DNA from: Haplodiscus bocki | Lineage: Eukaryota | DNA length: 64,000 nucleotides | Direction of reading: 5' to 3' | Assembly: GCA_965655095.1 (NCBI GenBank) | Contig: OZ296650.1 | Location: 8,060,001-8,124,000 of the forward strand | Part shown: positions 1 to 64,000 of the stretch, piece after piece | Position numbering within the stretch: the first letter of the stretch is position 1 | Layout: every line of letters starts with the position of its first letter | Made by a program: the position numbers and the translations under genes | The notes under the pieces: model-generated | What the model was told of the DNA's origin: nothing | Database searches by the model: none | The model's input: the letters and a program-made list of their open reading frames with translations, nothing else

Positions 1-1929
1 TGCAATTTTCACGGAGATTCCGAAGTGGTCCTGACAATGTTGATCTTCCTGCTCTGAACGGTTCGTGTTAGAAGTCTGAAACACTTTGAAGATAATGAAT
101 ACATCAAAAGATGTATTCAAACACTTCGATGTAGTCAGACATTATCTTAACCTGTTCGCTTGATTAAAGAAGGAACTTGAGTATTCGTAAAAAAACAAGA
201 TAATGGAAGCAGTGTCTTAGTTGAACTCAGATTTCAAAGAGCGAGCCTTAAGTGCAGTGGTCCAATCACGCAGTCTTCATGTCTTTTTTTACCTGTTCGG
301 AGCATTGAAGATCTTCCCGCTCTCATATCGTCGTGTTTGAAGTCTGAACAACATCGAAGATCATGATTACATCAAAAGTTGTATTCAATAATATGGCCGT
401 AGACAGACACTATCATAGCTGGTCGTTTGACTAAAGAACGAGTTCAAAACTTCGAAACAGCCAAAGCCACTGAAGCACTGTCCTAGTTGAACCCAGACAA
501 CACCTATCGAGTTTCGTCTGTAGTAATCTGTTCATGTTTGTTTCAGCACTTTCCTGACCCAGTGGCGAGAAAGTAGATCTTTCTGCTCTAAAGGGTTCGT
601 GTTAGAAGTCTGAACAACACTGAAGATCTTGATTACATCATAAGGTGTTTTCCAACACATCGCCGTAGTCAGACACTGATTTAAACTGAACGTAGGAAGA
701 AAGAACGATTTTTACTGTTCGTTTCAAGAAAGACCAAAGAAAAACTGGTTTAATTGAACTCACGCAACCCCTATCGAACTTTAATTGTGGTAATCTGATC
801 ATGCCTTTTTTTTAACTTTCCTGACCCGGTTGGGAAAAAGAAAGATTTTCCTGCTCTCAAGTGTCAACGTTACACATCTGAAAAACTTTGAGGATCATGA
901 TAACATCATAAGATGTTTTCCAACATATCGCTGTAGTCATACACCAACCTATGTTGACCATTTGACAAAATTAGGAACTTAGGTTTCAATTCAAGTGAGA
1001 CTACTGAACCACTGTCTTATTTGAACACTGGCAAAACCTATCGAATTTTGTCTCTAGTAATCTGACTATGCAATTTTCGCGAATTTCATGACCTGGTCCA
1101 GCGAACGTTGCTCTTCCTGCTCTGACGGGTTCGTGTTAGAAGTCTGAACCACTTTGAAGATCCTGATTACATCAAAAGACGTATTCAATTACTTCGCTGT
1201 AGTCACACACTATCTTAGCCTGTTCGTTTGACTAAAGGAGGAAATTAAGTCTTCCTAGTGAACAAAACCAGTGAAGCAATGTCTTAGTTGAACTCAGATA
1301 TCACAGATCAAGCTTTAAATGCTGTAGTCCAATCGTGCAAGTTGTACAGTTTCCCTAAACTGGTCGGGAACTGAAAGATCTTCCTGCTCCCATGAACTCG
1401 TGTTAAGACCTCTGAAGAACATTGAAGATCCTGATCACATCATCAGATGTGTTCTAATACTTCGCTGTAGTGAAACACTAACTTAGTTTAAGCGTATGAT
1501 TGACGAACGAATTATAAACTTCGTAATAAGCAAGACCACTGAAGCAGTCTCTTGGTTGAACTGAGACATCACAGATCAAGTTTTGTTTGTGATTATCTGA
1601 TCATGCAAGTTTTACGACTATCTTGACCCGGTGGGGAGACTTTAGATTTTCTTGCCCTCAAGAGTCCGCGTCAGACATCTGAAAAACATTGAAAATCATG
1701 GTTACATCACAAGTTGTATTGAAACACTTCGCCGAAGCCAGACACTGTCTGAGCATTGTCGTTTGACTAAAGAACGAACTAAAAACTTCGTAATAAATAG
1801 GACCACAAAAGCAGTGTCTTAGATGAATTCAGAAACTACAGATCAAGCTTTGTATGCTATCGTCCTATCATGCCAGTACTGCGATTTTTTCACCTGTTTA
1901 TTATATTGAATGTCTTCCAGCTGTGAAAC

Positions 1930-4900
1930 GTTCGTGTTAGAATTCTGAACCACATTGAAGATCCTGATGACACCAAAAGCTGTCTTTAAACACTTCGCTT
2001 TAGTAAGACACTATCTTAGCCTATTTGTTTGACTAATTAAGGAACTTAAGTCTTCGTAATGAACTAGACCAATGAACCAGTGTCTCAGTTGAACACAGAT
2101 TTCACAGAGCGAGCTTTACGTCCAATAGTCCAATCGTTCAATTTTTATGTTTTTTGACCTGGTAGTGAAATTGAACATCTTCCTGCTTTCAAAAAAATTG
2201 TCGGACTTCTGAGCAACATTGAAGATCCCAATTACATCATCAGTTGTGTTCAAATACTTCGCTACGGTAAGACACTAACATAGTTTATGCGTTGGATTGT
2301 AGAACGAACTATAAAATACGTTATTAGCAAGACACCGAACAACTGGCTCAGTTCAAGTCAAACAACAAAGATCGAGTTCTGTTTGTGGTTATCTGATGAT
2401 GCATGCTTTAGAATTTCAAAACTTGGTTGGGAAAATGTAGATCTTCTTGTTCTCAGGGGTTCGTGTTTGAAGCTTGAACAACATTGAAGATAGAAATTAC
2501 ATCGAAAGACATGTTCAAAAACTTCGCCGTAGTCAGACACTCCCTTAGCTTGGTCGATTGACCAAAGAACGAATAGAAAAATTCGCAAAAAGCTAGAACA
2601 CTGAAGCACTGTCTTAATTGAAAACATGAAAAACTCAGCCAGTCGTGTTTGTAGTATTCTGAATATGAAAGTTCCAGAAAAATCTTGACCTGGTCGAGAA
2701 AAGGTAGATCTTCTGATCTGTAGAGTTCATGTCAGACATCTGAAGGACGTTAAATATTAAAAACACATAGTAGGATGTGTTCAAACACTTCCCTGTAGTT
2801 AGAAACTAACTGAGTTTTAGCGTATCATTGAAGAACGAAGTATATTGTTGGTTGAAAGTAAAACCTCTGAAGCAATGTATTTCTCAATTCAAACTCAAAC
2901 ATCAAGGATCGAGTCCTAACTGCAGTCGTCCTAACATGCCAGTTGTTCAATTTCTTGATCTGGTTGGAGGTATAGAAAATTTCTTGCTTTCAAAAGTTCG
3001 CGTTAGACATCTGAACAACATTGAGGATCATGATTTTATCATAGGATGTTTTCCAACACAGCAGTGTAGTCAGACACCAACTTAGTTTGACCTTATGAAA
3101 AAAAAGAAGGCTACTCTTCATATCACGAGAGACCACTGAACCACTGGCTTAGTTGAACACTGGCAACAACTATCGAATTATGTGACTAGTAATCTGATTA
3201 TGCAAATTTCACGAATTTCCTGAAGTGGTCCTGAGAATGTTAATCTTCCTGCTGTGAACGGTTCGTGTTAGAAGTCTGAACCACTTTGAAGATCCTGATT
3301 AGATCAAAAGACGTATTCAAACACTTCGCTGTAGTCAGACATTATATTAGACTGTTCGTTTGATTAAAGGAGGAAATTAAGTCTTCCTAGTGAACAAAAC
3401 CAGTAAAGCAGTGTCTTAGTTGAACTCAAACATCACAGATGAAGCTTTAAGTGCGGTAGTGCAATCGTTCAAAATGTACTTTTTCCTTGCCCTGGTCGGG
3501 AGATAAAAGATCATCCTGCTCTCAAGGTTTCGTGCAAGAACTCTGAAGAGCATTGAAAATCTCAATCACATCATCAGATGTGTTCAATTACTTCGCTGTA
3601 GTGGAACACTAACTTAGTTTAAGCGTACGATTGAGGAACAAACTATAAATTTCTTAATAAACAAGACCACTGAAGCAGTCCTTTGGTTGAAGTCAGACAT
3701 CACAGATCGAGTTTTGTTCGTGGCTATCTGATAATACATGTTTTAGAATTTCATGAGCTCGTCGGGAAAGTATAGATCTTCTTGCTCTCAGCGTTTCGTC
3801 TTTGAAACTTGAACAACATTGAGTGTAGAAATTACATCAAAAGATGTGTTCAAAAACTTCGCCGTAGTCAGACACTCCCTTCGCCTGGTCGATTGACCAA
3901 AGAACGAATAGAAATGTTCGCAAAAAGCAAGAAGACTGAAGCACTGTCTTAATTGAGAACACAAAAAACTCAGCCAGTCGTGTTTTTAGTGTTCTGAATT
4001 TGAAAGTTCCAGAAAAATCTTGACTTTGTCGAGCGAATGTAGATCTTTCGACTCTGTAGAGATAATGTCAGACGTCTGAATGACGTTGAAGATTAAGATT
4101 ACATAGCAAGATGAGTTCAAACACTTCGCTGTACTTAGACACTAACTTAGTTTAGGTGTATGATTGAACAACGAACTATAAAGTTAGTTAAAAATAGGAC
4201 CACTGAAGCAATGTATCTCTCCGTTTAACTGACACATCACGGACCAAACTTTAACTGCAGTAGTCCTATCATGCAAGTTGTACGATTTTCTTGACCTGGT
4301 CGGGATAAAATGAATTTTCTTGCTCTCAAGTGTTCGCGTTAGATATCTTAACGACATTGAAAATAATGATTTTATCATAGGATGTTGTCCAACACATCGC
4401 TGTAGTCAGACACCAACTTAAGTTGACCATATGAAGAGAGAAAGATCTCAAATATTCTATTCAAGGGAGGCCAATGAACCACTGGCTTAACTGAACACTG
4501 GTAACACCTATCGGATTTTTGCTCCAGTAATCTGATTATGCAGCTTTTATGAACCTCCTGACGTGGCCCAGAGAATGTTGATCTTCCTGCTCTGAACTGT
4601 TCGTGTTAGAATTCTGAACCACATTGAAGATCCTGATGACACCAAAAGCTGTCTTTAAACACTTCGCTTTAGTAAGACACTATCTTAGCCTATTTGTTTA
4701 ACTAATTAGGGAACTTAAGTCTTCGTAATGAACTAGACCAATGAAGCAGTGTCTCAGTTGAACACAGATTTCACAGAGCGAGCTTTACGTCCAATAGTCC
4801 AATCGTGCAATTTTTATGTTTTTTTTTGACCTTGTAGTGAAATTGAACATCTTCCTGCTTTCAAAAAAATTGTCGGACTTCTGAACAACATTGAAGATCC

Positions 4901-6046
4901 CAATTACATCATCAGTTGTGTTCAAATACTTCGCTACGGTAAGACACTAACATAGTTTATGCGTTGGATTGTAGAACGAACTGTAAAATACGTTATTAGC
5001 AAGACACCGAACAACTGGCTCAGTTCAAGTCAAACAACAAGGATCGAGTTCTGTTTGTGGTTATCTGATAATGCATGCTTTAGAATTTCAAAACTTGGTT
5101 GGGAAAATGTAGATCTTCTTGTTCTCAGGGGTTCGTGTTTGAAGCTTGAACAACATTGAAGATAGAAATTACATCGAAAGACATGTTCAAAAACTTCGCC
5201 GTAGTCAGACACTCCCTTAGCTTGGTCGATTGACCAAAGAACGAATAGAAAAATTCGCAAAAAGCTAGAACACTGAAGCACTGTCTTAATTGAAAACATG
5301 AAAAACTCAGCCAGTCGTGTTTGTAGTATTCTGAATATGAAAGTTCCAGAAAAATCTTGACCTGGTCGAGAGAAGGTAGATCTTCTGATCTGTAGAGTTC
5401 ATGTCAGACATCTGAAGGACGTTAAATATTAAAAACACATAGTAGGATGTGTTCAAACACTTCCCTGTAGTTAGAAACTAACTGAGTTTTAGCGTATCAT
5501 TGAAGAACGAAGTATATTGTTGGTTGAAAGTAAAACCTCTGAAGCAATGTATTTCTCAATTCAAACTCAAACATCAAGGATCGAGTCCTAACTGCAGTCG
5601 TCCTAACATGCCAGTTGTTCAATTTCTTGATCTGGTTGGAGGTATAGAAAATTTCTTGCTTTCAAAAGTTCGCGTTAGACATCTGAACAACATTGAGGAT
5701 CATGATTTTATCATAGGATGTTTTCCAACACAGCAGTGTAGTCAGACACCAACTTAGTTTGACCTTATGAAAAAAAAGAAGGCTACTCTTCATATCACGA
5801 GAGACCACTGAACCACTGGCTTAGTTGAACACTGGCAACAACTATCGAATTATGTGACTAGTAATCTGATTATGCAAATTTCACGAATTTCCTGAAGTGG
5901 TCCTGAGAATGTTAACCTTCCTGCTGTGAACGGTTCGTGTTAGAAGTCTGAACCACTTTGAAGATCCTGATTAGATCAAAAGACGTATTCAAACACTTCG
6001 CTGTAGTCATACATTATATTAGACTGTTCGTTTGATTAAAGGAGGA
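1930..6046. repeat. Near-identical block pair ~1930-3375 and ~4600-6046 (offset 2669-2672)
   Basis: ORFs 2828 and 5500 translate identically; ORFs 2287/4959 and 2358/5030 differ at 2-3 residues. Both blocks start with the diagnostic 'attctgaaccacattgaagatcctgatgacaccaaaagc' (1942 and 4611). Confidence 0.9.
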
Positions 6047-8081
6047 ATTTGAGTTTTCGTAATAAACAAGACCAATGAAGCAGTGTCTTAGTTGAACTCA
6101 GATTGCAAAGAGCGAGTTTTAAGTGCAGTAGTCCAATCACGCAGTTTTCATGTCTTTCTTGACCTGTTCGGAGGATTGAAGGTCTTCCTGCTCTCAAGGC
6201 GTCGTGTTTGAAGTCTGAACAACATCGAAGATCATGATTACATCTAAAGTTGTATTCAATAATATGGCCGTAGTCAGACACTATCATAGCTGGTCGTTTG
6301 ACTCAAAAACGAATTCAAAACTTCGAAAGAGGCAAAGCCACTGAAGCACGGTCTTAGTTGAACCCAGACAAAACCTATCGAGTTTCGTCTGTAGTAATCC
6401 GTTCATGTATGTTTCAGCACTTTCCTGACCCAGTGGCGAGAAAGTAGATCTTCTTGCTCTAAAGAGTTCGTGTTAGAAGTCTGAACAACACTGAAGATCT
6501 TGATTACATCATAAGGTGTTTTCTAACACAACGCAGTAGTCATTCACCAAATTAACGTGAGCGCATGAAGAGTGAACGGTCTTTAAAATCATTTCAAGGA
6601 AGACCACAGAACCACTGGTTTAGTTGAACTAAGGCAACTCCTATCGAAAATTGTTTCTAGTAATCTGATCTTGCGAGTTTCAGAACCTTCATGACTTAGT
6701 GGGGAGAATGTAGTTATTCTGCTCTCAAGGGTTCGTGTTGAACGTCTGAACAACATTGAAGATGCTGATTTCATCAAAAGATGTATTCAAACCAATCGAT
6801 GTAGTCAGACACTATCTTAGCTTGGTCATTTGACTGAAGAACGAGCTGAAGGCTTCGTAACAAACAAGACCACTGAAGCAGTGTCTTAGTTGAACTCAAA
6901 CATCACAGATGAAGCTTTAAGTGCGGTAGTGCAATCGTTCAAAATGTACTTTTTCCTTGCCCTGGTCGGGAGATAAAAGATCATCCTGCTCTCAAGGTTT
7001 CGTGCAAGAACTCTGAAGAGCATTGAAAATCTCAATCACATCATCAGATGTGTTCAATTACTTCGCTGTAGTGGAACACTAACTTAGTTTAAGCGTACGA
7101 TTGAGGAACAAACTATAAATTTCTTAATAAACAAGACCACTGAAGCAGTCCTTTGGTTGAAGTCAGACATCACAGATCGAGTTTTGTTCGTGGCTATCTG
7201 ATAATACATGTTTTAGAATTTCATGAGCTCGTCGGGAAAGTGTAGATCTTCTTGCTCTCAGCGTTTCGTCTTTGAAACTTGAACAACATTGAGTGTAGAA
7301 ATTACATCAAAAGATGTGTTCAAAAACTTCGCCGTAGTCAGACACTCCCTTCGCCTGGTCGATTGACCAAAGAACGAATAGAAATGTTCGCAAAAAGCAA
7401 GAAGACTGAAGCACTGTCTTAATTGAGAACACAAAAAACTCAGCCAGTCGTGTTTTTAGTGTTCTGAATTTGAAAGTTCCAGAAAAATCTTGACTTTGTC
7501 GAGCGAATGTAGATCTTTCGACTCTGTAGAGATAATGTCAGACGTCTGAATGACGTTGAAGTGTAAGATTACATAGCAAGATGAGTTCAAACACTTCGCT
7601 GTACTTAGACACTAACTTAGTTTAGGTGTATGATTGAACAACGAACTATAAAGTTAGTTAAAAATAGGACCACTGAAGCAATGTATCTCTCCGTTTAACT
7701 GACACATCACGGACCAAACTTTAACTGCAGTAGTCCTATCATGCAAGTTGTACGATTTTCTTGACCTGGTCGGGACAAAATGAATTTTCTTGCTCTCAAG
7801 TGTTCGCGTTAGATATCTTAACGACATTGAAAATCATGATTTTATCATAGGATGTTGTCCAACACATCGCTGTAGTCAGACACCAACTTAAGTTGACCAT
7901 ATGAAGAGAGAAAGATCTCAAATTTTCTATTCAAGGGAGGCCAATGAACCACTGGCTTAACTGAACACTGGTAACACCTATCGGATTTTTTCTCCAGTAA
8001 TCTGATTATGCAGCTTTTATGAACCTCCTGACGTGGCCCAGAGAATGTTGATCTTCCTGCTCTGAACTGTTCGTGTTAGAA
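3406..8081. repeat. Near-identical block pair ~3406-4611 and ~6876-8081 (offset 3470 = 13 monomers)
   Basis: Both run from 'aagcagtgtcttagttgaactcaaacatcacagatgaagc' to 'ctgaactgttcgtgttaga' with only a few substitutions. Confidence 0.9.
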
Positions 8082-11000
8082 GTCTGAACCACTTTGAAGA
8101 TCCTGATTACATCAAAAGACGTATTCAAACACTTCGCTGTAGTCAGACACTATCTTAGCCTGTTCGTTTGATTAAAGAAGGAACTTAAGTCTTCGTGATA
8201 AACAAAACCAGTGAAGCATTGTCTTAGTTGAACTCAGATATCACAGATCAAGCTTTATATGCTGTAGTCCAATCGTGTAAGTTTTACAGTTTCCTTAAAT
8301 TGCTCGGGAGATGAAAGATCTTCCTGCTCCCATGAACTCTTGGAAGACGTCTGAAGAACATTGAAGATCCTGATCACATCATCAGATGTGTTCTAATACC
8401 TCGCTGTAGTGAAACACTAACTTAGTTTAAGCGTATGATTGACGAACGATTTATAAACTTCGTAATAAGCAAGACCACTGAAGCAGTCTCTTGGTTGAAC
8501 TGAGACATCACAGATCAAGTTTTGTTTTTGATTATCTGATCGTGCAAGTTTTACGACTATCTTGATCCGGTGGGGAGATTTTAGATTTTCTTGCCCTCAA
8601 GAGTCCGCGTCAGACATCTGAAAAACATTGAAAATTATGGTTACATCATAAGTTGTATTGAAACACTTCGCCGAAGCCAGACACTGACTGAGCATTGTCG
8701 TTTGACTAAAGAACGAACTAAAAACTTCGTTGTAATTAGGACCACAAAAGCAGTGTCTTAGATGAGTTCAAAAACTACAGATCAAGCTTTGTATGCAGTC
8801 GTCCTATCATGCCAGTACTGCAATTTTTTTCACCTGTTTATTATAATGAGTGTCTTCCAGCTCTGAAGCGTTCGTGTTAGAAGTCTGAACCACATTAAAG
8901 ATCCTGATTACATCAGAAGATGTTTTCAAACACTTCGTTTTAGTAAGACACCATCTTAGCCTGTTGGTTTGACTAAAGAAGGAACTTAAGTGTTCGTAAT
9001 GAAAAATAACAAAGAAGCAGCGTCTTAGTTGAACTCAGACTTCATGCATCGAGTGTTGTATGCAATCGTCCCATCATGCATGTTTATGTGTTTCTTGATT
9101 TGCTCGGGAAATTGAAGATCTTCCTGCTCTCAAAAGTTCTTGTTAACTATTGAATAACATTTGAGATCCCGATTACATCATCAGTTGTGTTCAAATACTT
9201 CGCTGTAGAATGTCTTTAACATATCTTTAGCGTAGGATTGTAGAACGAATTATAAAATACATTATAAGCAAGACACCGATAAATTGGCTCAGTTGAACTC
9301 AAACAACAAGGATCGAGTTCTGTTTGTGGTTATCTGATAATGCATGCTTTAGAATTTCAAGACTTGTTCGGGAAAATGTAGATCTTCTTGCTCTCATAGG
9401 TTCGTGTTTGAAGCTTGAACAACATTGAAGATAGAAATTACATCAAAAGATGTGTTCAAAAACTTCGCCGTAGTCAGACATTCCTTCAGCCTGGTTGTTT
9501 GACCAAAAAACGAATAGAAACGTTCGCAAAAAGCAAGAACACTGAAACACTGTCTTAATTGAAAACATAAAAAAATCAACCAGTCGTGTTTGTAGTTTTC
9601 TGAATATGAAAGTTCCAGAAAACTCTTGATCTGGTCGAGAGAATGTAGATCTTCTGACTCTGTAGATTTCATGCCAGACGTCTGAATGACGTTAACTATT
9701 AAGAATACATAGTAAGATGTGTTCAAACACTTCCTTGTAGTTAGAAACTAACTTAGTTTTAGCGCATCATTGAAGAACGAAATATATTGTTTGTTGAAAG
9801 TGAAACGACGGAAGCAATGTATTTCTCAGTTGAACTCAAACATCAAGGATCGAGTCTTAACTGCAGTCGTCCTAACATGCAAGTTGTACAATTTTCTCGA
9901 ACTGGTTGGGTGTATAAAAAATTTCTTGCTTTCAAAAGTTCGCGTTAGACATCTGAACAACATTGAGGATCATGACTTTATCATAGGATGTTTTCCAACA
10001 CATCGCTGTAGTCAGACACCAACTTAGTTTGATCTTATGAAAAAAAAGAACGCTACTCTTCAAATCAGGAGAGACCACTGAACCACTGGCTTAGCTGAAC
10101 ACTGGCAACAACTATCGAATTCTGTGACTAGTAATCTGATTATGCATTTTTCATGAATTTCCTGAAGTGATCCTGAGAATGTTGATCTTCCTGCTCTAAA
10201 CGGTTCGTGTTAGAAGTCTGAACCACTTTGAAGATCCTGATTAGATCAAAAGAGGTAATCAAACACTTCGCAGTAGTCAGATATTATATTAGCCTGTTCG
10301 CTTGATTAAAGGAGGAACTTGGGTATTCGTAACAAACAACACCAATGAAGCAGTGTCCTAGTTGAACTCAGATTTCAAAGAGCGGGCTTTAAGTACAGTA
10401 GTCCAATCACGCAGGTTTCATGTTTTTTGGCCTGTTCGGAGGATTGAAGATCTTCTTGCTCTCAAGGCGTCGTGTTTGAACTCTGAACAACATTGAAGAT
10501 CAAGATTACATCAAAAGCTGTATTCAATAATTTGGTCGTAGTCAGAAGCTATCATAGCTGGTCGTTTGACTGAAGAACGAATTCAAAACTTCGAAACAGA
10601 CAAAACCAATGAAGCATTGTCCTAGTTGAACCCAGCCAACACCTACCGAGTTTCGTCTGTAGTAATCTGTTCATGTTTGTTCCAGCACTTTCTTGACCCA
10701 GTGGGGAGAATAATAGATCTTCCTGCTCCAGAGGTTTCGTGTTAGAAGTCTGAACAACACTGAAGATCTTGATTACATCATAAGGTGTTTTCCAACACAT
10801 CGCAGTAGTCATTCACCAAATTAACGTGAGCGCATGAAGAGAGAACGATCTTTGAAATCATTTCAAGGAAGACCACAGAACCACTGGTTTAGTTGAACTA
10901 AGGCAACTCCTATCGAAAATTGTTTCTAGTAATCTGATCTTGCAAGTTTCAGAACCTTCATGACTTAGTGGGGAGAATGTAGTTATTCTGCTCTCAAGGG

Positions 11001-21900: not shown

Positions 21901-21950
21901 CGAACTCTACTGTTCGTTTCAAAAGAGACTACAGAAGCACTGACTCAGGC
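12950..21950. repeat. Domain 2: 7-mer HOR (~1862-1868 bp), about 4.5 copies; first copy is a 6-mer, second carries a ~170-bp deletion
   Basis: The diagnostic monomer 'ttctgactctttggag..cagacgtatgaatgacatcgagg' lies at ~13916, 15524, 17220, 19088 and 20950 (spacings 1608, 1696, 1868, 1862). ORF starts 17419 and 21149 are 3730 apart (2 x 1865). Confidence 0.88.
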
Positions 21951-26500: not shown

Positions 26501-26899
26501 CTTAAATTGAGCGTATGAAGAAAGAATGCACTTTAACTTTCGTTTCATGAGAGACCGCTGAACCACTGGCTTAGTTGGACTGTGGCAAAACCTATCGAAT
26601 TTTGTCCCCAGTAATCATGTATGTTTCAGGACTTTGTTGAACTGGGCGGAAGAATGTAGATCCTCTTGCTCTCATCCTTTCGCATTAGCAGTCTGATCAA
26701 CTTGAATCTGAAGATCATGAATGCATCATGTGCTGTCTTCAAAATCTTCGCCGTAGTCAGCCACTATCATAGACTAGTCGTTTGACCAAAGAACGAAGTG
26801 TCGACGTCGTAAAACAGGAGACCACTGAGGAAATGACTTAGTTACACTCAGATTTCACAGGTCGCGGTTTGTTTGCAATCGTCCTAACATGCACGTTTT

Positions 26900-35000: not shown

Positions 35001-35212
35001 TCACAGTTGTCAGACACTATCTTAGCCTGGTCGTTTGACTAAAAAACGAGTTGAAAAACTTGTAAAACGCAAGACCACTGAACCACTGTTTTGTTTGAAC
35101 CCAGACAATACCTAGACAAAATTGTTTGAAGTAATCCGGTCATTCAAGTTTCAGAAATTTGTTGACCTAGTCGGGAAAATAAAAACCTTCTTGCTCTCCA
35201 GCGTTTGTGAAC

Positions 35213-52500: not shown

Positions 52501-53610
52501 TAAGTGGAGTAGTCTTACCATGCAAGTTGTACGGTTTTCTTGACCTGGTCGATAATTTGAGGAAGGATCTTCCTGCTCTCATGAAATCGTGCGAGATTTC
52601 TGAACAACATTGAAGATACTGACTACATCATCAGATTTTTTCAAATACTTCGCTGCAGTGAGACACTACTTTAGCTTAAGCGTGTGATCGAAGAACGAAC
52701 AACGAAATTTAAAGTTCGTTTTAATCAAGACCACAGAAGCAATGACTTAGTTGATCTCAGACAACACTGATTGAGGGTTTGTATGTAAAACTGTGATCTT
52801 GCGAGTTTCTCCAATTTCCTGATTTGGTTAGAAGATTGTAGAAATCTTGACTCTGTAGGGATTGCGTCAGACGTCTGAACAACACTGAAGATCATGATTA
52901 CATCTCAAAATGTGTTCAAACACTTCACACTTCGCTGTTTTGAGACCCTAACTAAACTTAAGCGTATGATTGAAGACCGAACTATAAAATTCGTTGTAAG
53001 TAAGACCACTGAGGCATTAGGTTTCTCAGGTGAACTCAGACATCACAGATTGAGATGTAAGTGGAGTTGTCTTACCATGCAAGTTGTACGGTTTTCTTGA
53101 CCTGGTCGATAATTTGAGGAAGGATCTTCCTGTTCTCATGAAATCGTGCGAGACTTCTGAACAACATTGAAGATACTGACTACATCATCAGACTTTTTCA
53201 AATAATTCGCTGCAGTGAGACACTACTTTAGTTTAAGCGTGTGATCGAAGAACGAACAACGAACTTTAAAATTCGTTTTAATCAAGACCACAGCAGCAAT
53301 GGCTTAGTTGATCTCAGACAACACTGATTGAGGGGTTGTATGTAAAACTGTGATCTTGCGAGTTTCTCCAATTTCCTGATTTGGTTAGAAGATTGTAGAA
53401 ATCTTGACTCTGTAGGGATTGCGTCAGACGTCTGAACAACATTGAAGATCATGATTACATCTCAAAATGTGTTCAAACACTTCACACTTCGCTCTTTTGA
53501 GACCCTAACTAAACTTAAGCGTATGATTGAAGACCGAACTATAAAATTCGTTGTAAGTAAGACCACTGAGGCATTAGGTTTCTCAGGTGAACTCAGACAT
53601 CACAGATTGA
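46580..53610. repeat. Near-identical tandem duplication, period ~3787 bp (14-mer variant)
   Basis: ORF pairs 47871/51658, 48364/52151 and 49107/52894 are identical at offset 3787. Confidence 0.9.
48530..50210. repeat. Nested 557-bp dimer, 3 copies
   Basis: 'ctggtcga.aatttgagg' at ~48757, 49314 and 49871; homologous ORFs end at 48756, 49313 and 49870. Confidence 0.93.
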
Positions 53611-54550
53611 GATGTAAGTGGAGTTGTCTTACCATGCAAGTTGTACGGTTTTCTTGACCTGGTCGATAATTTGAGGAAGGATCTTCCTGTTCTCATGAAA
53701 TCGTGCGAGACTTCTGAACAACATTGAAGATACTGACTACATCATCAGACTTTTTCAAATACTTCACTGCAGTGAGACACTACTTTAGTTTAAGCGTGTG
53801 ATCGAAGAACGAACAACGAACTTTAAAATTCGTTTTAATCAAGACCACAGAAGCAATGGCTTAGTTGATCTCAGACAACACTGATTGAGGGGTTGTATGT
53901 AAAACTGTGATCTTGCGAGTTTCCTCAATTTCCTGATTTGGTTAGAAGATTGTAGAAATCTTGACTCTGTAGGGATTGCGTCAGACGTCTGAACAACATT
54001 GAAGATCATGATTACATCTCAAAATGTGTTCAAACACTTCACACTTCGCTCTTTTGAGACCCTAACTAAACTTAAGCGTATGATTGAAGACCGAACTATA
54101 AAATTCGTTGTAAGTAAGACCACTGAGGCATTAGGTTTCTCAGGTGAACTCAGACATCAGAGATTGAGATCTAAGTGGAGTAGTCTTACCATGCAAGTTG
54201 TACGGTTTTCTTGACCTGGTCGAGAATTTGAGGATCTTCCTGCTCTCATGAAATCGTGCGAGACTTCTGAACAACATTGAAGATACTGACTACATCATCA
54301 GATTTTTTCAAATACTTCGCTACAGTGAGACACTACTTTAGCTTAAGCGTGTGATCGAAGAAAGAACAACGAACTTTAAAATTCGTTTTAATCAAGACCA
54401 CAGAAGCAATGGCTTAGTTGATCTCAGACAACACTGATTGAGGGGTTGTATGTAAAACTGTGATCTTGCGAGTTTCCTCAATTTCCTGATTTGGTTAGAA
54501 GATTGTAGAAATCTTGACTCTCTAGGGTTCGCGACAAACGTCTGAACAAC
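52315..54550. repeat. Nested 557-bp dimer, 4 copies
   Basis: Homologous ORFs end at 52543, 53100, 53657 and 54214 (spacing 557). Confidence 0.93.
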
Positions 54551-55152
54551 ATTCAAGCTCATGATTACATGATAAGATGTGTTCAAGCACAACGGTGTGG
54601 TCAGACACCAACTTATCCTGAGCGTAGGTTGAAAGAACAAAATTTAGGAGAGACCGAAGAAGCCCTGGCATTGCTGAAATCCAGCTACACCTTTGAGCTT
54701 TATTTGTAGTAATCTGATCATGCAAGGTTTTCAGTTTTATTAACCTAGTTGAGTGAAATTAGATTTTCTTGCTCTCAGTGTCCCATTAGACATCTGAACA
54801 ACATTGAAGGTCACGATTACATCACAGGATAATTTCGAGCACATCGCAGCAGTCATTCATTCACAAACCTAACCTGAGCGTATGAAGAATGAACGACCTT
54901 TAATGTTCGTTGCAAGAGAGACCAAAAAATCACTGGCTTAGTTGAACTCAGGCAACTTCTATCGACTTTTTTTCTGTTGTAATGTGATCACGTGTGTTTG
55001 AGGACTTTGTTGAACTGGTCGGAGGAATATATTTCCTCTTGCGCTCAAGGTTTGGTGTTAGAAGTCTGAAAAACATTGAATATCTGGAATACATCATAAG
55101 TTGCAATCAAACACCTCACAGATGTCAGACACTATCTTAGCCTGGTCGTTTG

Positions 55153-58100
55153 ACTAAAGAACGAGTTGAAAAATTCGTAAAACGCAAGACCACTGAAGCA
55201 ATGTTTTATTTGGACCCAGACAATACCTAGACAAATTTGTCTGAAGTAATCCGGTCATTCAAGTTTCAGAAATTTCTTGATATAGTCGAGAAAAAATAGA
55301 TCTTCCTGCTCTCAATTGTTCGTGTTAGAGGTCTGAACAACATTGAAGATTCTGTTTACATTATAAGACGTAATGAAAACTTTCGCCATAGTCAGACACC
55401 ATTTTTGTTCGGTCGTTTTAGTTAAGGACAACCTGAAGTCTTCGTAATGAACAAAACCACTGAAGCAGTGTCGTAGATGAATTCAGACTTCATAGATCGA
55501 GTTTTGTATGCAATCGCCCTATGATGCAGGTTTTTTGACTGTCTTGATCTGCTCGGGAAATCGAAGATCTTCGTGCTCTCAAAAAAACTTTTTGGACGTC
55601 TGAAGAACATTGAAGATACTGATTACATTATCAGATGTTCTCAAATACTTCGCTGTCGTGAGACACTAACATAGTTTAAGCGTAAGAGTAAAGACCGAAC
55701 TATAATGTTAGTTAAAGGTCAGACCACTGCAGCTACGTGCTTCCCCGTTTAACTAAGATATAAAGGATTGAGGTATAAGTGCAGTTGTCCTATCATACAA
55801 GTTGTACGGTTTTCTTGACCTGGTCGGTAATTTAAAGATCTTACTGCTGTCATGAGTTCGTGTTAGACGTCTGAACAACATTAAAGATCCTGATTACATC
55901 ATCAGATATTTTCGAAGTTTTCGCTGTAGTGAGACATTAACTTGTTTCAAGTGTATAATTGAAAAACGAACTATATATTTCGGCATAGGCAAAAGCAACG
56001 AAGCATTGCCTTAGTTGAGCTCAGACAACGCGGAGAATTATTCGTATGTAAAAATCTGATCATGCAAGTTTCACCACATTCTGGACCTGGTCGGGAGAAT
56101 GTAGAACTTCTGACTCTCCGGAGGTTGTGTGAGACGTCTGAACAACATTGAAGATCATGATTATATCTCAAAATGTGTTCAAACACTTCACACTTCGCTG
56201 TTTTGAGACACTAACTAAACTTAAGCGTATGATTGAAGACCGGACTATAAAATTCGTTATAAGTAAGACCACTGAAGCATTAGGTTTCCCAGGTGAACTC
56301 AGACATCACAGATTGAGACCTAAGTGGAGTAGTCTTACCATGCAAGTTGTACGGTTTTCTTGACCTGGTCGATAATTTGAGGAAGGATCTTCCTGCTCTC
56401 ATGAAATCGTGCGAGACTTCTGAACAACATTGAAGATACTGACTACATCATCAGATTTTTTCAAATACTTCGCTGCAGTGAGACACTACTTTAGCTTAAG
56501 CGTGTGATCGAAGAACGAACAACGAACTTTAAATTTCGTTTTAAGCGAGACCACAGAAGCAATGGCTTAGTTGATCTCCGACAACACTGATTGAGGTTTT
56601 GTATGTAAAACTGTGATCCTGCGAGTATCTTCAACTTCCTGATTTAGTTAGAAGATTGTAGGAATCTTGACTCTGTAGGGATTGCGTCAGACGCCTGAAC
56701 AACATTCAAGGTCATGATTACATGATAAGATGTGTTCAAGCACAACGGTGTGGTCAGACACCAACTTATCGTGAGCGTAGTTTGAAAGAACAAAATTTAG
56801 GAGAGACCGAAGAAGCCCTGGCATTGTTGAACTCCAGCTACTCCCATTGAGCTTTATTTTTAGTAATCTGATCATGCAAGGTTTTCAACTTTACTAACCT
56901 GGTTGAGTGAATTTAGATTTTCTTGCTCTCAGTGTCCCGTTAAACATCTGAACATTATTGAAGGTCATGATTACATCATAGGATAACTTCCAGCACATCG
57001 CAGCAGTCATTCATTCACAAACCTAACCTGAGCGTATGAAGAATGAACGACTTTTTACTGTTCGTTGCAAGAGAGACCAAAAAATCACAGGCTTAGTTGA
57101 ACTCAGGCAACTTCTATCGACTTTTTTTCTGTTGTAATGTGATCACGTGTGTTTCAGGACTTTGTTGAACTGGTCGGAGGAATATATTTCCTCTTGCGCT
57201 CAAGGTTTGGTGTTAGAAGTCTGAAAAACATTGAATATCAGGATTACACCATAAGTTGCAATCAAACACCTCACAGTTGTCAGACACTATCTTAGCCTGG
57301 TCGTTTTACTAAAGAACGAGTTGAAAAATTCGTAAAACGCAAGACCACTGAAGCAATGTTTTATTTGGACCCAGACAATACCTAGACAAATTTGTCTGAA
57401 GTAATCCGGTCATTCAAGTTTCAGAAATTTCTTGATATAGTCGAGAAAAAATAGATCTTCCTGCTCTCAATTGTTCGTGTTAGAGGTCTGAACAACATTG
57501 AAGATTCTGTTTACATTATAAGACGTAATGAAAACTTTCGCCATAGTCAGACACCATTTTTGTTCGGTCGTTTTAGTTAAGGACAACCTGAAGTCTTCGT
57601 AATGAACAAAACCACTGAAGCAGTGTCGTAGATGAATTCAGACTTCATAGATCGAGTTTTGTATGCAATCGCCCTATGATGCAGGTTTTTTGACTGTCTT
57701 GATCTGCTCGGGAAATCGAAGATCTTCGTGCTCTCAAAAAAACTTTTTGGACGTCTGAAGAACATTGAAGATACTGATTACATTATCAGATGTTCTCAAA
57801 TACTTCGCTGTCGTGAGACACTAACATAGTTTAAGCGTAAGAGTAAAGACCGAACTATAATGTTAGTTAAAGGTCAGACCACTGCAGCTACGTGCTTCCC
57901 CGTTTAACTAAGATATAAAGGATTGAGGTATAAGTGCAGTTGTCCTATCATACAAGTTGTACGGTTTTCTTGACCTGGTCGGTAATTTAAAGATCTTACT
58001 GCTGTCATGAGTTCGTGTTAGACGTCTGAACAACATTAAAGATCCTGATTACATCATCAGATATTTTCGAAGTTTTCGCTGTAGTGAGACATTAACTTGT

Positions 58101-59472
58101 TTCAAGTGTATAATTGAAAAACGAACTATATATTTCGGCATAGGCAAAAGCAACGAAGCATTGCCTTAGTTGAGCTCAGACAACGCGGAGAATTATTCGT
58201 ATGTAAAAATCTGATCATGCAAGTTTCACCACATTCTGGACCTGGTCGGGAGAATGTAGAACTTCTGACTCTCCGGAGGTTGTGTGAGACGTCTGAACAA
58301 CATTGAAGATCATGATTATATCTCAAAATGTGTTCAAACACTTCACACTTCGCTGTTTTGAGACACTAACTAAACTTAAGCGTATGATTGAAGACCGGAC
58401 TATAAAATTCGTTATAAGTAAGACCACTGAAGCATTAGGTTTCCCAGGTGAACTCAGACATCACAGATTGAGACCTAAGTGGAGTAGTCTTACCATGCAA
58501 GTTGTACGGTTTTCTTGACCTGGTCGATAATTTGAGGAAGGATCTTCCTGCTCTCATGAAATCGTGCGAGACTTCTGAACAACATTGAAGATACTGACTA
58601 CATCATCAGATTTTTTCAAATACTTCGCTGCAGTGAGACACTACTTTAGCTTAAGCGTGTGATCGAAGAACGAACAACGAACTTTAAATTTCGTTTTAAG
58701 CGAGACCACAGAAGCAATGGCTTAGTTGATCTCCGACAACACTGATTGAGGTTTTGTATGTAAAACTGTGATCCTGCGAGTATCTTCAACTTCCTGATTT
58801 AGTTAGAAGATTGTAGGAATCTTGACTCTGTAGGGATTGCGTCAGACGCCTGAACAACATTCAAGGTCATGATTACATGATAAGATGTGTTCAAGCACAA
58901 CGGTGTGGTCAGACACCAACTTATCGTGAGCGTAGTTTGAAAGAACAAAATTTAGGAGAGACCGAAGAAGCCCTGGCATTGTTGAACTCCAGCTACTCCC
59001 ATTGAGCTTTATTTTTAGTAATCTGATCATGCAAGGTTTTCAACTTTACTAACCTGGTTGAGTGAATTTAGATTTTCTTGCTCTCAGTGTCCCGTTAAAC
59101 ATCTGAACATTATTGAAGGTCATGATTACATCATAGGATAACTTCCAGCACATCGCAGCAGTCATTCATTCACAAACCTAACCTGAGCGTATGAAGAATG
59201 AACGACTTTTTACTGTTCGTTGCAAGAGAGACCAAAAAATCACAGGCTTAGTTGAACTCAGGCAACTTCTATCGACTTTTTTTCTGTTGTAATGTGATCA
59301 CGTGTGTTTCAGGACTTTGTTGAACTGGTCGGAGGAATATATTTCCTCTTGCGCTCAAGGTTTGGTGTTAGAAGTCTGAAAAACATTGAATATCAGGATT
59401 ACACCATAAGTTGCAATCAAACACCTCACAGTTGTCAGACACTATCTTAGCCTGGTCGTTTTACTAAAGAAC
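55153..59472. repeat. Apparently perfect tandem duplication, period 2155 bp (8-mer variant lacking monomers E and F)
   Basis: ORF pairs 55422/57577, 55971/58126, 56148/58303 and 56687/58842 are all identical at offset 2155; no difference noticed by eye. Confidence 0.93.
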
Positions 59473-62400
59473 CAGTTGCAAAACTCGTAAAACGCAAGAC
59501 CACTGAATCACTGTTTTATTTGGACCCAGACAATACCTAGACAAATTTGTCTGAAGTAATCCGGTCGTTCAAGTTTCAGAAGTTTCTTGATTTAGTCGGC
59601 AAAAGATAGATCTTCCTGCTCTCAAGCGTTTGTGTTAGAGGTCTGAACAACATTGAAGATTCTGTTTACATCATAAGACGTAATGAAAACTTTCGCCATA
59701 GTCAGACACCATTTTTGTTCGGTCGTTTTAGTGAAGAACAACATGAAGTCTTCGTAATGAACAAAACCACTGAAGCAGTGTCGTAGATGAATTCAGACTT
59801 CATAGATCGAGTTTTGTATGCAATCGCCCTATGATGCAGGTTTTTCAACTGTCTTGATCTGCTCGGGAAATTGAAGATCTTTCTGCTCTCAAAGAATCTT
59901 GTTGGACGTCTGAAGAACATTGAAGATACTGATTACATCATCAGATGTGTTGAAATACTTCGCTGTCTTGAGACACTAACATAGTTTAAGCGTATGATTG
60001 AAGAACGAACTATGAATTTCGTTAGAAGCAAGACCGCAGAACCACTCACTCCGTTGAACGCATTTAGCACTGGTCTTTTTTTGTAGTAATATGATCATGC
60101 TAGTTTCACAACTTTTATGTTAGTTTCACGATTCTCTAGAGCTGATTTCAGACGTCTGAACGACATTGAAGATCTTGAATACATAATAAAAATTTTCCCA
60201 GCACATTGCTGTAGACATACTAGCTCAATCTGAGCGTACGAAGAAAGAATGAACTTTTTTGTTCGTTTCAGGAGAGACTAAAGAAGCACTGGTTTAGTTG
60301 AACTCAGGCAACAGAGTTCGAGTTTTAAGTGTAGTAGACAAATCATGCAAATGGTACTCTTTTTTGCCTGGTGGTGAGGTTAAGCATATTGTTGCACTCA
60401 AGAGTTTGTGCTACACGTCTGAAAAGCATTGAAGATCAAGATTACATTGCAAGACGTGTTCAAATACATCGTTGTAGTGAGACACTAACTTCGTTTGAAC
60501 GTATGAATAAAGACCGAACTATAATGTTCGTTAAAGTTCAGACCACTGCAACTAAGTGCTTCTCAGTTCAACTAAGATATATCGGATTGAGTTTTAAGTG
60601 CAGTTGTCCTATCATAAAAGTTGTACGGTTTTCTTGACCTGGTCGGTAAGTTAAAGATCTTACTGCTGTCATGAGTTCGTGTTAGACGTCTCAACAACAT
60701 TAAAGATCCTGATTACATCAACAGATTTTTTCGAATTTTTCGTTGTAGTGAGACATTAAATGGTTTCAACTGTATAATTGAAAAACGAACTACAAATTTC
60801 GGTATAGGCAACAGCAACGAAGCATTGGCTTAGTTGAGCTCAGACAACGCGGAGAATTATTCGTATGTAAAAATCTGATCATGCAAGTTTCACCACATTC
60901 TGGACCTGTTCGGGAGAATGTAGAACTCCGACTCTCCGGATGTTGTGTCAGACGTCTGAACAACAATGAAGATCATGATTACATCTCAAAATGTGTTCAA
61001 ACACTTCACACTTCGCTGTTTTGAGACGCTAATTAAACTTAAGCGTATGTTTGAAGACCGGACTATAAAATTCGTTATAAGTAAGACCACTGAAGCATTA
61101 GGTTTCCCAGGTGAACTCAGACATCACAGATTGAGACCTAAGTGGAGTAGTCTTACCATGCAAGTTGTACGGTTTTCCTGACCTGGTCGAGAATTTGAGG
61201 ATCTTCCTGCTCTCATGAAATCGTGCGAGACTTCTGAACAACATTGAAGATACTGACTATATCATCGGATTTTTTCAAATACTTCGCTGCAGTGAGACAC
61301 AACTTTAGCTTAAGCGTGCGACGAAGAACGAACAACGAACTTTAAAATTCGTTTTAAGCAAGACCACAGAAGCAATGGCCTAGTTGATCTCAGACAACAC
61401 TGATCAAGGTTTTGTATGTAAAAGTGTGATCTTGCAGGTTTCTCCACTTTTTTGATCTGGTTAGGAGATTGTAGAAATCTTGACTCTCTAGGGTTCGCGA
61501 CAAACGTCTGAACAACATTCAAGGTCATGATTACATGATAAGATGTGTTCAAGCACAACGGTGTGGTCAGACACCAACTTATCCTGAGCGTAGGTTGAAA
61601 GAACAAAATTTAGGAGAGACCGAAGACGCCCTGGCTTTGTTGAACTCCAGCTACACCTATTGAGCTTTTTTGTAGTAATCTGATCATGCAAGGTTTTCAA
61701 CTTTACTAACCTGGTTGAGTGAATTTAGATTTTCTTGCTCTCAGTGTCCCGTTAGACATCTGAACAACATTGAAGGTCATGATTACATCATAGGATAACT
61801 TCCAACACATCGCAGCAGTCATTCATTCACAAACCTAACCTGAGCGTATGAAGAATGAACGACCTTAAGTGTTCGTTGCAAGAGAGACCAAAAAATCACT
61901 GGCTTAGTTGAACTCAGGCAACTTCTGTCGACTTCTTTTCTGTAGTAATGTGATCACGTGTGTGTCAGGACTTTGTTGAACTGGTCGGAGGAATATTTTT
62001 CCTCTTGAGCTCAAGGTTTGGTGTTAGAAGTCTGAAAAACATTGAATATCAGGATTACATCATAGGTTGCAATCAAACACCTCACAGTTGTCAGACACTA
62101 TCTTAGGCTGGTCGTTTGACTAAAGAACGAGATGAAAAATTCGTAAGACGCAAGACCACTGAAGCAATGTTTTATTTGGACCCAGAAAATACATAGACAA
62201 ATTTGTCTGAAGTAATCCGGTCATTCAAGTTTCAGAAGTTTCTTGATTTAGTCGGCAAAATATAGATCTTCCTGCTCTCAAGCGTTTGTGTTAGAGGTCT
62301 GAACAGCATTGAAGATTCTGTTCACATCATAAGACGAAATGAAAACTTTCGCCATAGTCAGACACCATTTTTGTTCGGTCGTTTTAGTGAAGAACAACCT

Positions 62401-64000
62401 GAAGTCTTTGTAATGAACAAAACCACTAAAGCAGTGTCGTAGGTGTATTCAGGCTTGATAGATCGAGTTTTGTATGCAATCGCCCTATGATGCAGGTTTT
62501 TCTACTGTCTTGATCTGCTCGGGAAATTGAAGATCTTTCTGCTCTCAAAAAATCTTGTTGGACGTCTGAAGAATATTGAAGATACTGATTACATAACCAG
62601 ATGTGTTGAAATACTTCGCTGTGGTGAGACACTAACATAGTTTAAGCGTATGATTGAAGAACGAACTAAAGATTTCGTTAGAAGCAAGACCGCAGAACCA
62701 CTCACTCCGTTGAACGCATTTAGCACGGGTCTTCTTTTGTAGTAATATGATGATGCTAGTTTCAAAACTTTTATGTTAGTTTCACGATTCTCTAGAGCTG
62801 ATTTCAGACGTCTGAACGACATTGAAGATCTTGATTACATACTAACATGTTTCCCAGCACATGGCTGTAGACATACTGGCTCAATCTCAGCGTACGACGA
62901 AAGAATGAACTTTTTTGTTCGTTTCAGGAGAGACTAAAGAAGCACTGGTTTAGTTGAACTCAGGCAACAGAGTTCAAGTTTTAAGTGTATTAGACCAATC
63001 ATGCAAGTTGTACTATTTTTTTACCTGATGGTGAGGTTAAGCATCTTCTTGCACTCAAGAGTTCGTGCTACACGTCTGAAAAGCATTGAAGATCATGATT
63101 ACCTTGCAAGACGTGTTCAAATACTTCGTTGTAGTGGGACACTAACTTAGTTTAAGCGTATGAATAGAGACGGGAATATAATGTTAGTTAAAGGCCAGAC
63201 CACTGCAGCTACGTGCTTCCCAGTTTAACTAAGGTATAACGGATTTAGGTCTAATTGCAGTTGTCCTATCATACAAGTTGTACGGTTTTCTTGACCTGGT
63301 CGTTAAGTTAAAGATCTTACTGCTGTCATGAGTTCGTGATAGACGTCTGAACAACATTAAAGATCCTGATTACATCATCAGATGTTTTCGAATTTTTCGC
63401 TGTAGTGAGACATTAACTGTTTTCCAATGTATAATTGAAAAACGAACTTTAAATTTCGGTATAGGCAGGAGCAACGAAACATTGGCTTAGTTGAGCTCAG
63501 ACAACGCGGAGAATTATTCGTATGCAAAAATCTGATCATGCAAGTTTCACCACATTCTGGACCTGATCAGGAGAATGTAGAACTCAGACACTCCGGAGGT
63601 TGTGTCAGACGTCTGAACAACATTGAAGATCATGATTACCTCTCAAAATGTGTTCAAACACTTCACACTTCGCTGTTTTGAGACACTAACTTAACTTAAG
63701 CGTATGATTGAAGACCGAACTATAAAACTTGTTATAAGTAAGACCACTGAAGCATTAGGTTTCCCAGGTGAACTCAGACATCACAGATTGAGATCTAAGT
63801 GGAGTAGTCTTACCATGGATATTGTACCGTTTTCTTGACCTGGTCGATAATTTGAGGAAGGATCTTCCTGCTCTCATGAAATCGTGCGAGACTTCTGAAC
63901 AACATTCAAGATACCGACTACATCATTAGATTTTTTTTAAATACTTCGCTGCAGTGAGACACAACTTTAGCTTAAGCGTGCGACGAAGAACGAACAACGA

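What the first reader, a model, noticed from the sequence alone, without database searches (positions are those of the whole stretch)
1..64000. 267-bp satellite with alpha-satellite-like, multi-domain higher-order repeat architecture (candidate centromeric array)
Seen: adjacent monomers differ widely, while monomers one HOR apart are nearly identical. Four domains have different periodicities (16/8-mer, 7-mer, monomeric/dimeric, 10-mer). There is no inversion or foreign insertion in 64 kb. Known: diverged monomers in homogeneous HORs next to older heterogeneous layers is the hallmark of primate alpha satellite. Inference: this may be an independently evolved HOR system at a centromere or its margin. 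I do not recognise the 267-bp family, so it may be undescribed.
Basis: partly seen in the sequence, partly recalled or inferred. Interest (0 to 1): 0.7.

Follow-up and report, generated by a model that had tools for sequence, protein, structure and literature searches.

The report
Satellite array born from ribosomal-gene spacer
This 64-kb stretch is a real, non-coding satellite with layered higher-order repeats, but its 267-bp unit is a copy of a short repeat in the spacer between this animal's ribosomal RNA genes, and the big array exists on only one chromosome, so it is a known kind of spacer-derived satellite with no sign of being a centromere.

Summary
The whole window is 243 head-to-tail ~267-bp monomers, all on the + strand. 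Neighbouring monomers are ~65% identical. Monomers 7, 8, 10 or 14 units apart reach 100%.

The family has a source, and it is not centromeric. The same 268-bp unit sits as 3-6 near-identical copies in every rDNA unit, about 5.6-7.5 kb upstream of 18S. The rDNA lies near the ends of several chromosome-scale contigs.

- The spacer monomer is 93% identical to the majority consensus of the window's monomers. No window monomer exceeds 87%.
- On a tree it is the tip closest to the midpoint root (0.05 against 0.34 substitutions per site).
- The array's left flank is colinear, at 75% identity, with the spacer DNA that precedes the 268-bp block in rDNA.

The array spans ~143 kb (C3:7.988-8.131 Mb) and is the only large one in the 1.5-Gb assembly. 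A second, ~11-kb inverted array lies 1 Mb away.

I read it as an rDNA spacer fragment that escaped, amplified early, diverged, and was later re-amplified in blocks. Centromere function is untested, and the single-chromosome distribution argues against it. Spacer-derived satellites are already known in tomato, tetra fishes and Drosophila. Earlier notes of this scan report several other higher-order satellites in this genome.

The parts
44..12850 (+). Domain 1: 48 monomers of ~267 bp with irregular segmental duplications of 3-8 monomer blocks (lags 10, 13, 16, 26; 92-100% identity)
   Evidence: class string shows blocks FGHIJ, KHLM, ABNOKH and CDE each twice; adjacent identity 64.5%
12851..12896 (+). 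46-bp stretch not matched by the monomer profile; overlaps a 25-bp x 2.6 microrepeat (12864-12928)
12897..22025 (+). Domain 2: 7-mer higher-order repeat (about 1866 bp), about 5 copies at 90-98% identity
   Evidence: class string TUVWRSX repeated; k-mer offsets 1864-1872
22031..34648 (+). Domain 3: old, mostly unhomogenised monomers (best partner averages 85%), with one 5-mer duplication at 24145-26660 (offset 1263 bp, 91-98%)
34651..63995 (+). Domain 4: young 10-mer higher-order repeat (2671 bp; classes k-l-m-n-o-p-q-i-j-r; copies 98-100% identical), with 8-mer variants (2155 bp) and 14-mer variants from expansion of the o-p dimer (557 bp)
44928..45031 (+). 104-bp degenerate stretch inside domain 4 not matched by the monomer profile

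Best explanation
The window is the central and right part of a ~143-kb non-coding satellite array at G000:C3:~7,988,225-8,131,370. Its 267-bp monomer descends from the 268-bp subrepeat of this genome's rDNA intergenic spacer (IGS).

Inferred history, in four steps:
1. A spacer fragment without rRNA genes came to lie on C3. It carried the 188-bp subrepeats, the unique spacer stretch and the start of the 268-bp block. It got there either by ectopic transfer or as the remnant of an old rDNA site.
2. The 268-bp block amplified early into many copies.
3. Outside the concerted evolution of rDNA, the copies drifted apart, each to about 20% from the ancestor.
4. Unequal crossing-over or replication slippage later re-amplified multi-monomer blocks in the interior. 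This made the 7-mer and 10-mer higher-order repeats and left the array edges old and heterogeneous.

Shown: the homology, the conserved junction, the central position of the spacer monomer, the single large locus, and the layered structure.

Inferred: the order of events, the recombination mechanism, and that the array is now functionally inert repeat DNA, probably heterochromatin, and not a centromere.
For: - All other genomic copies are 1-1.8-kb blocks inside a unit of at least 10 kb that is 98-99% identical between copies. These blocks lie 5.6-7.5 kb upstream of 18S rRNA. TRF on one rDNA unit gives 268 bp x 2.9-5.9 copies at 99% identity.
- The spacer monomer is 93% identical to the consensus of the 243 window monomers. 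Window monomers are 77.5% identical to that consensus (maximum 86.8%), 66% to each other and 74.5% to the spacer monomer. These numbers fit a star-like descent in which each satellite lineage keeps ~80% of the ancestor and the spacer keeps ~92.5%.
- On a midpoint-rooted FastTree of 202 monomers, the spacer tip lies 0.051 from the root. Satellite tips lie at 0.341 +/- 0.057 (minimum 0.207).
- The left flank C3:7,985,366-7,988,225 is colinear with the spacer DNA next to the 268-bp block in rDNA. One 1843-bp alignment at 75.4% identity crosses the junction into the first monomers.
- Both blocks begin with a partial monomer, at profile position 101 in C3 and 120 in the spacer.
- No rRNA or other Rfam family occurs in the window, and no ORF exceeds 166 aa.
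- Monomers at the array edges match nothing better than ~70-73%. Interior samples match others at 89-100%.
Against: - The direction of transfer is inferred. An early capture of the array's edge by the rDNA spacer is not strictly excluded.
- The left part of the array (7.99-8.06 Mb) was only sampled in 1-2-kb pieces.
- Nothing was measured about chromatin, transcription or kinetochore proteins.
- A spacer-derived repeat can sit in a centromere, as in the Drosophila chromosome 3 centromere (PMC6516634). Origin alone therefore does not rule out a centromere role.
Confidence: 0.82

Rival explanations
1. The array is the centromeric or pericentromeric satellite of chromosome C3. It would be a chromosome-specific centromere repeat that happens to derive from the rDNA spacer, perhaps acting together with the small inverted array 1 Mb away.
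For: It has higher-order repeats with a young homogeneous core and old edges. An LTR retrotransposon lies at its right edge. A second array of the family sits at C3:9,154,129-9,164,891 on the opposite strand. A spacer-derived repeat lies inside a mapped Drosophila centromere (PMC6516634). Clustered non-contiguous satellite arrays are reported for a cnidarian genome.
Against: - Only one chromosome carries a large array.
- At 143 kb the array is small for a 135-Mb chromosome.
- This genome holds several other higher-order satellites, none tied to centromeres (earlier notes).
- Sharing between chromosomes is one criterion of the centromere atlas, and it is not met here.
- There are no chromatin data.
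Confidence: 0.08
2. The array is the in-place relic of an ancient rDNA site on C3 whose rRNA genes were deleted, and not a spacer fragment moved from elsewhere.
For: C3 carries rDNA units at 2.59-2.63 Mb, on the same chromosome end. The retained spacer flank keeps the same order as in rDNA. rDNA occurs at many sites in this assembly.
Against: No rRNA-gene remnant was found in the 30 kb to the left or the 8.6 kb to the right of the array. Homology to the rDNA unit stops inside the 188-bp subrepeats on the left and at the last monomer on the right. Small spacer fragments without visible rDNA context are scattered elsewhere (C7:45.88 Mb, C7:96.1 Mb, C2:115.27 Mb, C5:31.68 Mb), so dispersal does happen.
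Confidence: 0.2
3. The direction is reversed: the satellite is the older entity, and the rDNA spacer captured a few monomers with adjacent sequence from the array's edge.
For: Homology alone is symmetric.
Against: - The spacer monomer sits at the centre of the monomer tree and is not nested in any one array lineage.
- 70-bp pieces of the monomer are also embedded in other spacer repeats downstream of the block.
- The shared flank includes 188-bp subrepeats that form their own arrays in the spacer.
Confidence: 0.05
4. The structure is partly an assembly artefact, with the 100% identical higher-order copies created by mis-joining or over-expansion.
For: Several blocks are 100% identical.
Against: Most of the array is made of monomers 65-90% identical, which assemble uniquely. 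The domains have distinct variants and orderly deletion and expansion variants. There is no N in the window.
Confidence: 0.03

Closest known systems
rDNA IGS-derived satellite repeats of tomato and related Solanum (Jo et al. 2009, PMC2679016)
   Same: One type of spacer subrepeat is amplified into a satellite outside canonical rDNA, and the neighbouring spacer and rRNA-coding sequences are lost from the array (abstract).
   Different: This is an animal genome. The array is at a single locus and very diverged (65% between neighbours), with well-developed higher-order repeats. No intermediate stages with retrotransposon-interrupted rDNA were seen.
Centromere-enriched IGS variant in the Giglio island of the Drosophila melanogaster chromosome 3 centromere (Chang et al. 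2019, PMC6516634)
   Same: A tandem array of spacer repeats of single origin, duplicated from the rDNA loci to one autosomal site.
   Different: In Drosophila, CENP-A binding was measured. Here nothing shows centromere function. This array is larger in monomer number (~535 against 240 copies) and far more diverged from its source.
As51 satellite of characiform fishes (PMC13170303)
   Same: An animal satellite whose monomer is found inside the 45S rDNA spacer, interpreted as spacer-born and then dispersed (abstract).
   Different: As51 has a 51-bp unit and is spread over many heterochromatic sites. Here the unit is 267 bp and there is one large locus.
Primate alpha satellite
   Same: Diverged monomers, homogeneous higher-order repeats in the interior, and older heterogeneous monomeric layers at the edges.
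   Different: There is no sequence relation. The monomer is 267 bp and not 171 bp. The array is 143 kb and not megabases. It lies on one chromosome and not all. Its origin in the rDNA spacer is traceable. There is no evidence of kinetochore function.

Membership tests
rDNA IGS-derived satellite | The monomer is homologous to a subrepeat of the same genome's rDNA intergenic spacer | tested here: met
   Spacer monomers score 282-286 bits against the window's monomer profile. They are 93% identical to the window consensus. The spacer blocks lie 5.6-7.5 kb upstream of 18S.
rDNA IGS-derived satellite | The array lies outside rDNA units and lacks rRNA genes | tested here: met
   No Rfam hit in the window. 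The flanks share only spacer sequence with a complete rDNA unit. The array is continuous for ~143 kb against 1-1.8 kb in the spacer.
rDNA IGS-derived satellite | Evidence of descent from the spacer, not chance similarity: a shared junction or flank, and the source sequence basal to the array's monomers | tested here: met
   A 1843-bp colinear alignment at 75.4% crosses the junction between unique spacer and the first monomers. The spacer tip is the closest to the midpoint root.
Centromeric satellite (alpha-satellite-like) | Tandem monomers organised in higher-order repeats with homogenised copies | tested here: met
   7-mer and 10-mer repeats; copies up to 100% identical against 65% between neighbours.
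Centromeric satellite (alpha-satellite-like) | One major array per chromosome, with the family shared among chromosomes | tested here: not met
For an array-specific 18-mer, 29 of 30 hits fall in C3:8.088-8.126 Mb.
Centromeric satellite (alpha-satellite-like) | Occupied by CENP-A/CENH3 nucleosomes, or coincides with the primary constriction | not testable with these tools
Centromeric satellite (alpha-satellite-like) | Lies in a gene-poor, transposon-enriched region | tested here: inconclusive
   An LTR retrotransposon (gag, protease, RNase H, integrase) lies 1.6 kb beyond the right edge. ORFs in the 30 kb to the left have no Pfam match. Too little flank was examined to judge.

The most novel reading that the evidence does not exclude
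The 143-kb array, perhaps together with the small inverted array 1 Mb to its right, is the centromere of chromosome C3. That would be a chromosome-specific centromere built from an escaped rDNA spacer repeat in an animal with TTAGGG telomeres, which earlier notes call probably a coral. It would parallel the spacer repeats in the Drosophila chromosome 3 centromere.
Probability: 0.07. Interest if true: 0.6.

Novelty: new member of a known kind. Interest (0 to 1): 0.3.

Why it matters
Satellite origins are rarely traceable, because turnover erases the source. Here three things survive together: the source (a subrepeat still sitting almost unchanged in the rDNA spacer), the original junction, and the amplified product.

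That makes it possible to set a relative clock: early amplification, ~20% drift per monomer lineage, then block re-amplification at 0-8% divergence. It also shows that concerted evolution in rDNA kept the source about three times closer to the ancestor than the escaped copies.

This is a clean teaching case of how higher-order repeats arise without any centromere being needed. It also warns against reading higher-order structure as a centromere mark.

Tried and rejected
- **Sequencing runs:** No read depth, transcription or run-based organism check was possible, and read laying was not used.
- **Further genome fetches:** The second array at C3:9.154-9.165 Mb and the small loci on C2, C5 and C7 are known only from pattern hits.
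- **Apparent colinearity with the 10-mer repeat:** the multi-monomer matches between the 10-mer and the spacer blocks looked colinear at first. They are only consensus-like spacer monomers matching any window monomer at ~75%.
- **Ancient dimer:** The best half-against-half score is 16, against 16.6 +/- 2.2 for shuffles, so this is not supported.
- **Dyad symmetry:** one 21-nt near-palindrome scores 27, against 20.6 +/- 3.6 for shuffles, which is not significant.
- **CpG decay as a sign of methylation:** CpG positions are retained at 72.5% and other C/G positions at 67.9%, so there is no signal.
- **Coding or known-RNA content:** none.
- **Transposon link:** earlier notes tie other satellites of this genome to transposons. 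This family has only a few hundred motif hits genome-wide, nearly all in the C3 array or rDNA, so it is not a dispersed transposon cargo.
- **Literature:** searches for a described 267-bp satellite found only unrelated taxa.
- **Organism:** identity could not be established. Only the TTAGGG telomere repeat was seen.
Full report
**1. The observation**

TRF reports a 267-bp period over most of the window. Base composition is flat at 37-39.5% G+C. A profile HMM built from the window's own monomers finds 243 monomers, all on the + strand, covering 62,599 of 64,000 bases. Apart from the window edges, the only uncovered stretches over 30 bp are 12851-12896 and 44928-45031. Only 32 reverse-complement 16-mers are shared with the forward strand. 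There is therefore no inversion and no foreign insertion.

Adjacent monomers average 65% identity (maximum 80%). The overall pairwise mean is 66%. Lags 2, 8, 10, 13, 14 and 16 reach 99-100%.

Clustering monomers at 88% identity gives a class string that shows the architecture directly.
- Domain 1 (44-12850) is a patchwork of duplicated 3-8-monomer blocks at lags 10, 13, 16 and 26. It is not a regular 16/8-mer.
- Domain 2 (12897-22025) is a clean 7-mer.
- Domain 3 (22031-34648) is mostly unique, old monomers whose best partner averages 85%. It holds one 5-mer duplication.
- Domain 4 (34651-63995) is a 10-mer of 2671 bp, with 8-mer and 14-mer variants. The 14-mers arise from expansion of a 557-bp dimer.

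**2. Extent and copy distribution**

The window is G000:C3:8,060,001-8,124,000 on a 135.2-Mb contig of a 1.50-Gb assembly. Sampling the flanks puts the array between about 7,988,225 and 8,131,370. That is ~143 kb, roughly 535 monomers, all on the + strand. No monomers appear in samples from 7.0-7.986 Mb or 8.136-9.2 Mb.

Monomers at both ends of the array match nothing better than ~70-73%. Interior samples match other samples or the window at 89-100%. This is the expected pattern for an array homogenised by unequal exchange in its interior.

**3. Where the family comes from**

A genome search with one 10-mer unit returned only ~75%-identical matches. These lay near contig ends (C4, C5 at both ends, C6, C8, C11), at C2:33.9 Mb and C3:2.6 Mb, and on many unplaced contigs. 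Fetched examples show 1-1.8-kb blocks of the repeat inside a unit of at least 10 kb that is 98-99% identical between copies. Searches with the eukaryotic 18S model hit the same contigs.

A 50-kb stretch of contig C89 gave a full rDNA unit of ~42.6 kb, with 18S, 5.8S and 28S on the opposite strand. The 268-bp block lies 5.6-7.5 kb upstream of the 18S 5' end. It sits among other spacer subrepeats of 188, 324, 351, 53, 30 and 1790 bp. Within the spacer the 268-bp copies are 99% identical to each other.

C6 begins with a CCCTAA run at base 1 and carries its spacer block at 41.6 kb, so at least that rDNA site is next to a telomere.

**4. Evidence for descent from the spacer**

- *Identity to the consensus.* The spacer monomer is 93% identical to the majority consensus of the 243 window monomers. 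Window monomers are 77.5% identical to it on average and never above 86.8%. They are 74.5% identical to the spacer monomer in every domain.
- *Fit to a star phylogeny.* If each satellite lineage keeps ~80% of the ancestral sites and the spacer keeps ~92.5%, the expected identities are 65% (satellite to satellite), 74.5% (satellite to spacer) and 93% (spacer to consensus). These are the observed values. This arithmetic is mine, on the figures.
- *Tree position.* On a midpoint-rooted maximum-likelihood tree of 202 monomers, the spacer tip is 0.051 substitutions per site from the root. Satellite tips are at 0.341 +/- 0.057, minimum 0.207. The spacer tip also has the smallest mean distance to all other tips.
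- *Shared junction.* The 2.86 kb left of the array (C3:7,985,366-7,988,225) is colinear with the spacer stretch that precedes the 268-bp block in rDNA. One 1843-bp alignment at 75.4% crosses from unique spacer into the first monomers. Both blocks open with a partial monomer, at profile position 101 in C3 and 120 in the spacer.
- *Timing.* The unique flank is as diverged (75%) as the monomers are from the spacer monomer (74.5%). This suggests that monomer diversification began about when the fragment left rDNA.
- *Right side.* The right side shares nothing with rDNA beyond the last monomer. An LTR retrotransposon with gag, protease, RNase H and integrase follows 1.6 kb further on.

**5. Is there any other large array?**

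Two conserved motifs were counted over the whole assembly, each with up to two mismatches.
- The first gives 443 hits, of which 134 are in the window.
- The second gives 265 hits, of which 54 are in the window.

After allowing for the rest of the C3 array and the ~120 assembled spacer monomers, little is left over. An 18-mer variant typical of the satellite but absent from the spacer occurs 30 times, 29 of them in C3:8.088-8.126 Mb.

The exceptions are small. One is an array of at least 10.8 kb on the opposite strand at C3:9,154,129-9,164,891, whose hit spacing suggests a 9-mer of 2417 bp. The others are one to three monomers at C2:102.96 Mb, C2:115.27 Mb, C5:31.68 Mb, C5:119.00 Mb, C7:45.88 Mb, C7:96.1 Mb and a few more sites. 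Their sequence could not be fetched.

**6. What it most likely is and does**

It is non-coding. No ORF exceeds 166 aa and there is no Rfam match. The best reading is an escaped rDNA spacer fragment whose 268-bp block amplified, diverged outside the concerted evolution of rDNA, and was re-amplified in blocks.

Unequal crossing-over or replication slippage is the standard mechanism for such arrays. That is inferred from the pattern of young interior and old edges and was not observed. I expect the array to be inert, probably heterochromatic, repeat DNA. CpG positions show no excess decay, so there is no sequence trace of heavy germline methylation.

**7. The centromere question**

Nothing testable here supports a centromere. 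The family is on one chromosome only, the array is small for a 135-Mb chromosome, and higher-order structure is not diagnostic. A 325-genome atlas describes it as recurrent and most frequent in array centres, and scores candidates higher when they are shared between chromosomes (bioRxiv 10.64898/2026.09.17.752431). Earlier notes of this scan list several other higher-order satellites in this genome, none tied to a centromere.

It cannot be excluded. Drosophila melanogaster has 240 copies of a spacer variant inside the mapped chromosome 3 centromere (PMC6516634). I put the centromere reading at about 0.08.

**8. Comparison with what is known**

Spacer-derived satellites are described in tomato (PMC2679016). 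Potato, tobacco and common bean are cited within PMC6516634. Tetra fishes have As51 (PMC13170303), and Drosophila has the centromeric variant above. This case belongs to that kind.

Its particular features are the preserved junction, the near-ancestral source still present in the spacer, and the strongly layered higher-order structure. I found no paper on this 267-bp family. The organism is unidentified, so this absence is weak. The only organism evidence is an animal genome per earlier notes and a TTAGGG telomere.

**9. Limits**

- The array's left 70 kb was only sampled.
- Copy counts rest on motif searches of one assembly, and satellites may be under-assembled.
- No reads, chromatin or expression data could be used.
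- Short motifs used in pattern searches were taken from the alignments made here.

Noticed in passing
G000:C3:9,154,129-9,164,891 (outside the window, about 1.03 Mb to its right): A second, small array of the same family on the opposite strand. Exact-motif hits are spaced 268/537/806/1611 bp with a recurring 2417-bp offset, suggesting a 9-mer higher-order repeat. 17 exact copies of a 21-mer occur in at least 10.8 kb (about 40 monomers), against 15 exact copies among the window's 243 monomers, so it may be closer to the ancestral sequence.
   Followed up: partly
L045-L048 + L041 (G000:C89:64001-114000): The rDNA unit is about 42.6 kb. Its spacer is a patchwork of subrepeats (188, 268, 324, 351, 53, 30 and 1790 bp). 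The transcribed spacer between 18S and 5.8S is about 4 kb and holds about 12 copies of a 129-bp repeat.
   Followed up: partly
L047:3003-4407 (G000:C89:87003-88407): An extra partial 28S fragment (model positions 2391-3003, stretched over 1405 bp) lies about 4 kb beyond the 3' end of the 28S gene, inside the spacer.
   Followed up: no
L021:7006-10000 and L022:1-1984 (G000:C3:8,133,006-8,137,984): An LTR retrotransposon with ORFs for gag (DUF1759/Retrotrans_gag), aspartyl protease, RNase H and integrase lies 1.6 kb beyond the right end of the array.
   Followed up: partly
G000:C4:~14 kb, C5:~24 kb and ~119.08 Mb, C6:~41 kb, C8:~95.00 Mb, C11:~91.73 Mb; also C2:33.9 Mb and C3:2.59-2.63 Mb: rDNA units sit near the ends of at least five chromosome-scale contigs. 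C6 starts with a CCCTAA telomere run at base 1. Two or three interstitial rDNA sites also exist.
   Followed up: partly
G000:C7:45,880,837-45,881,367; C7:96,108,355-96,108,786; C2:102,957,506-102,957,938; C2:115,267,787-115,267,951; C5:31,681,968-31,682,235: One to three spacer-type monomers at scattered interstitial places, possibly further escaped rDNA spacer fragments or partial rDNA units.
   Followed up: no
window:12864-12928: A 25-bp unit repeated 2.6 times at the boundary between domains 1 and 2, in the one place where the monomer profile fails to match.
   Followed up: no
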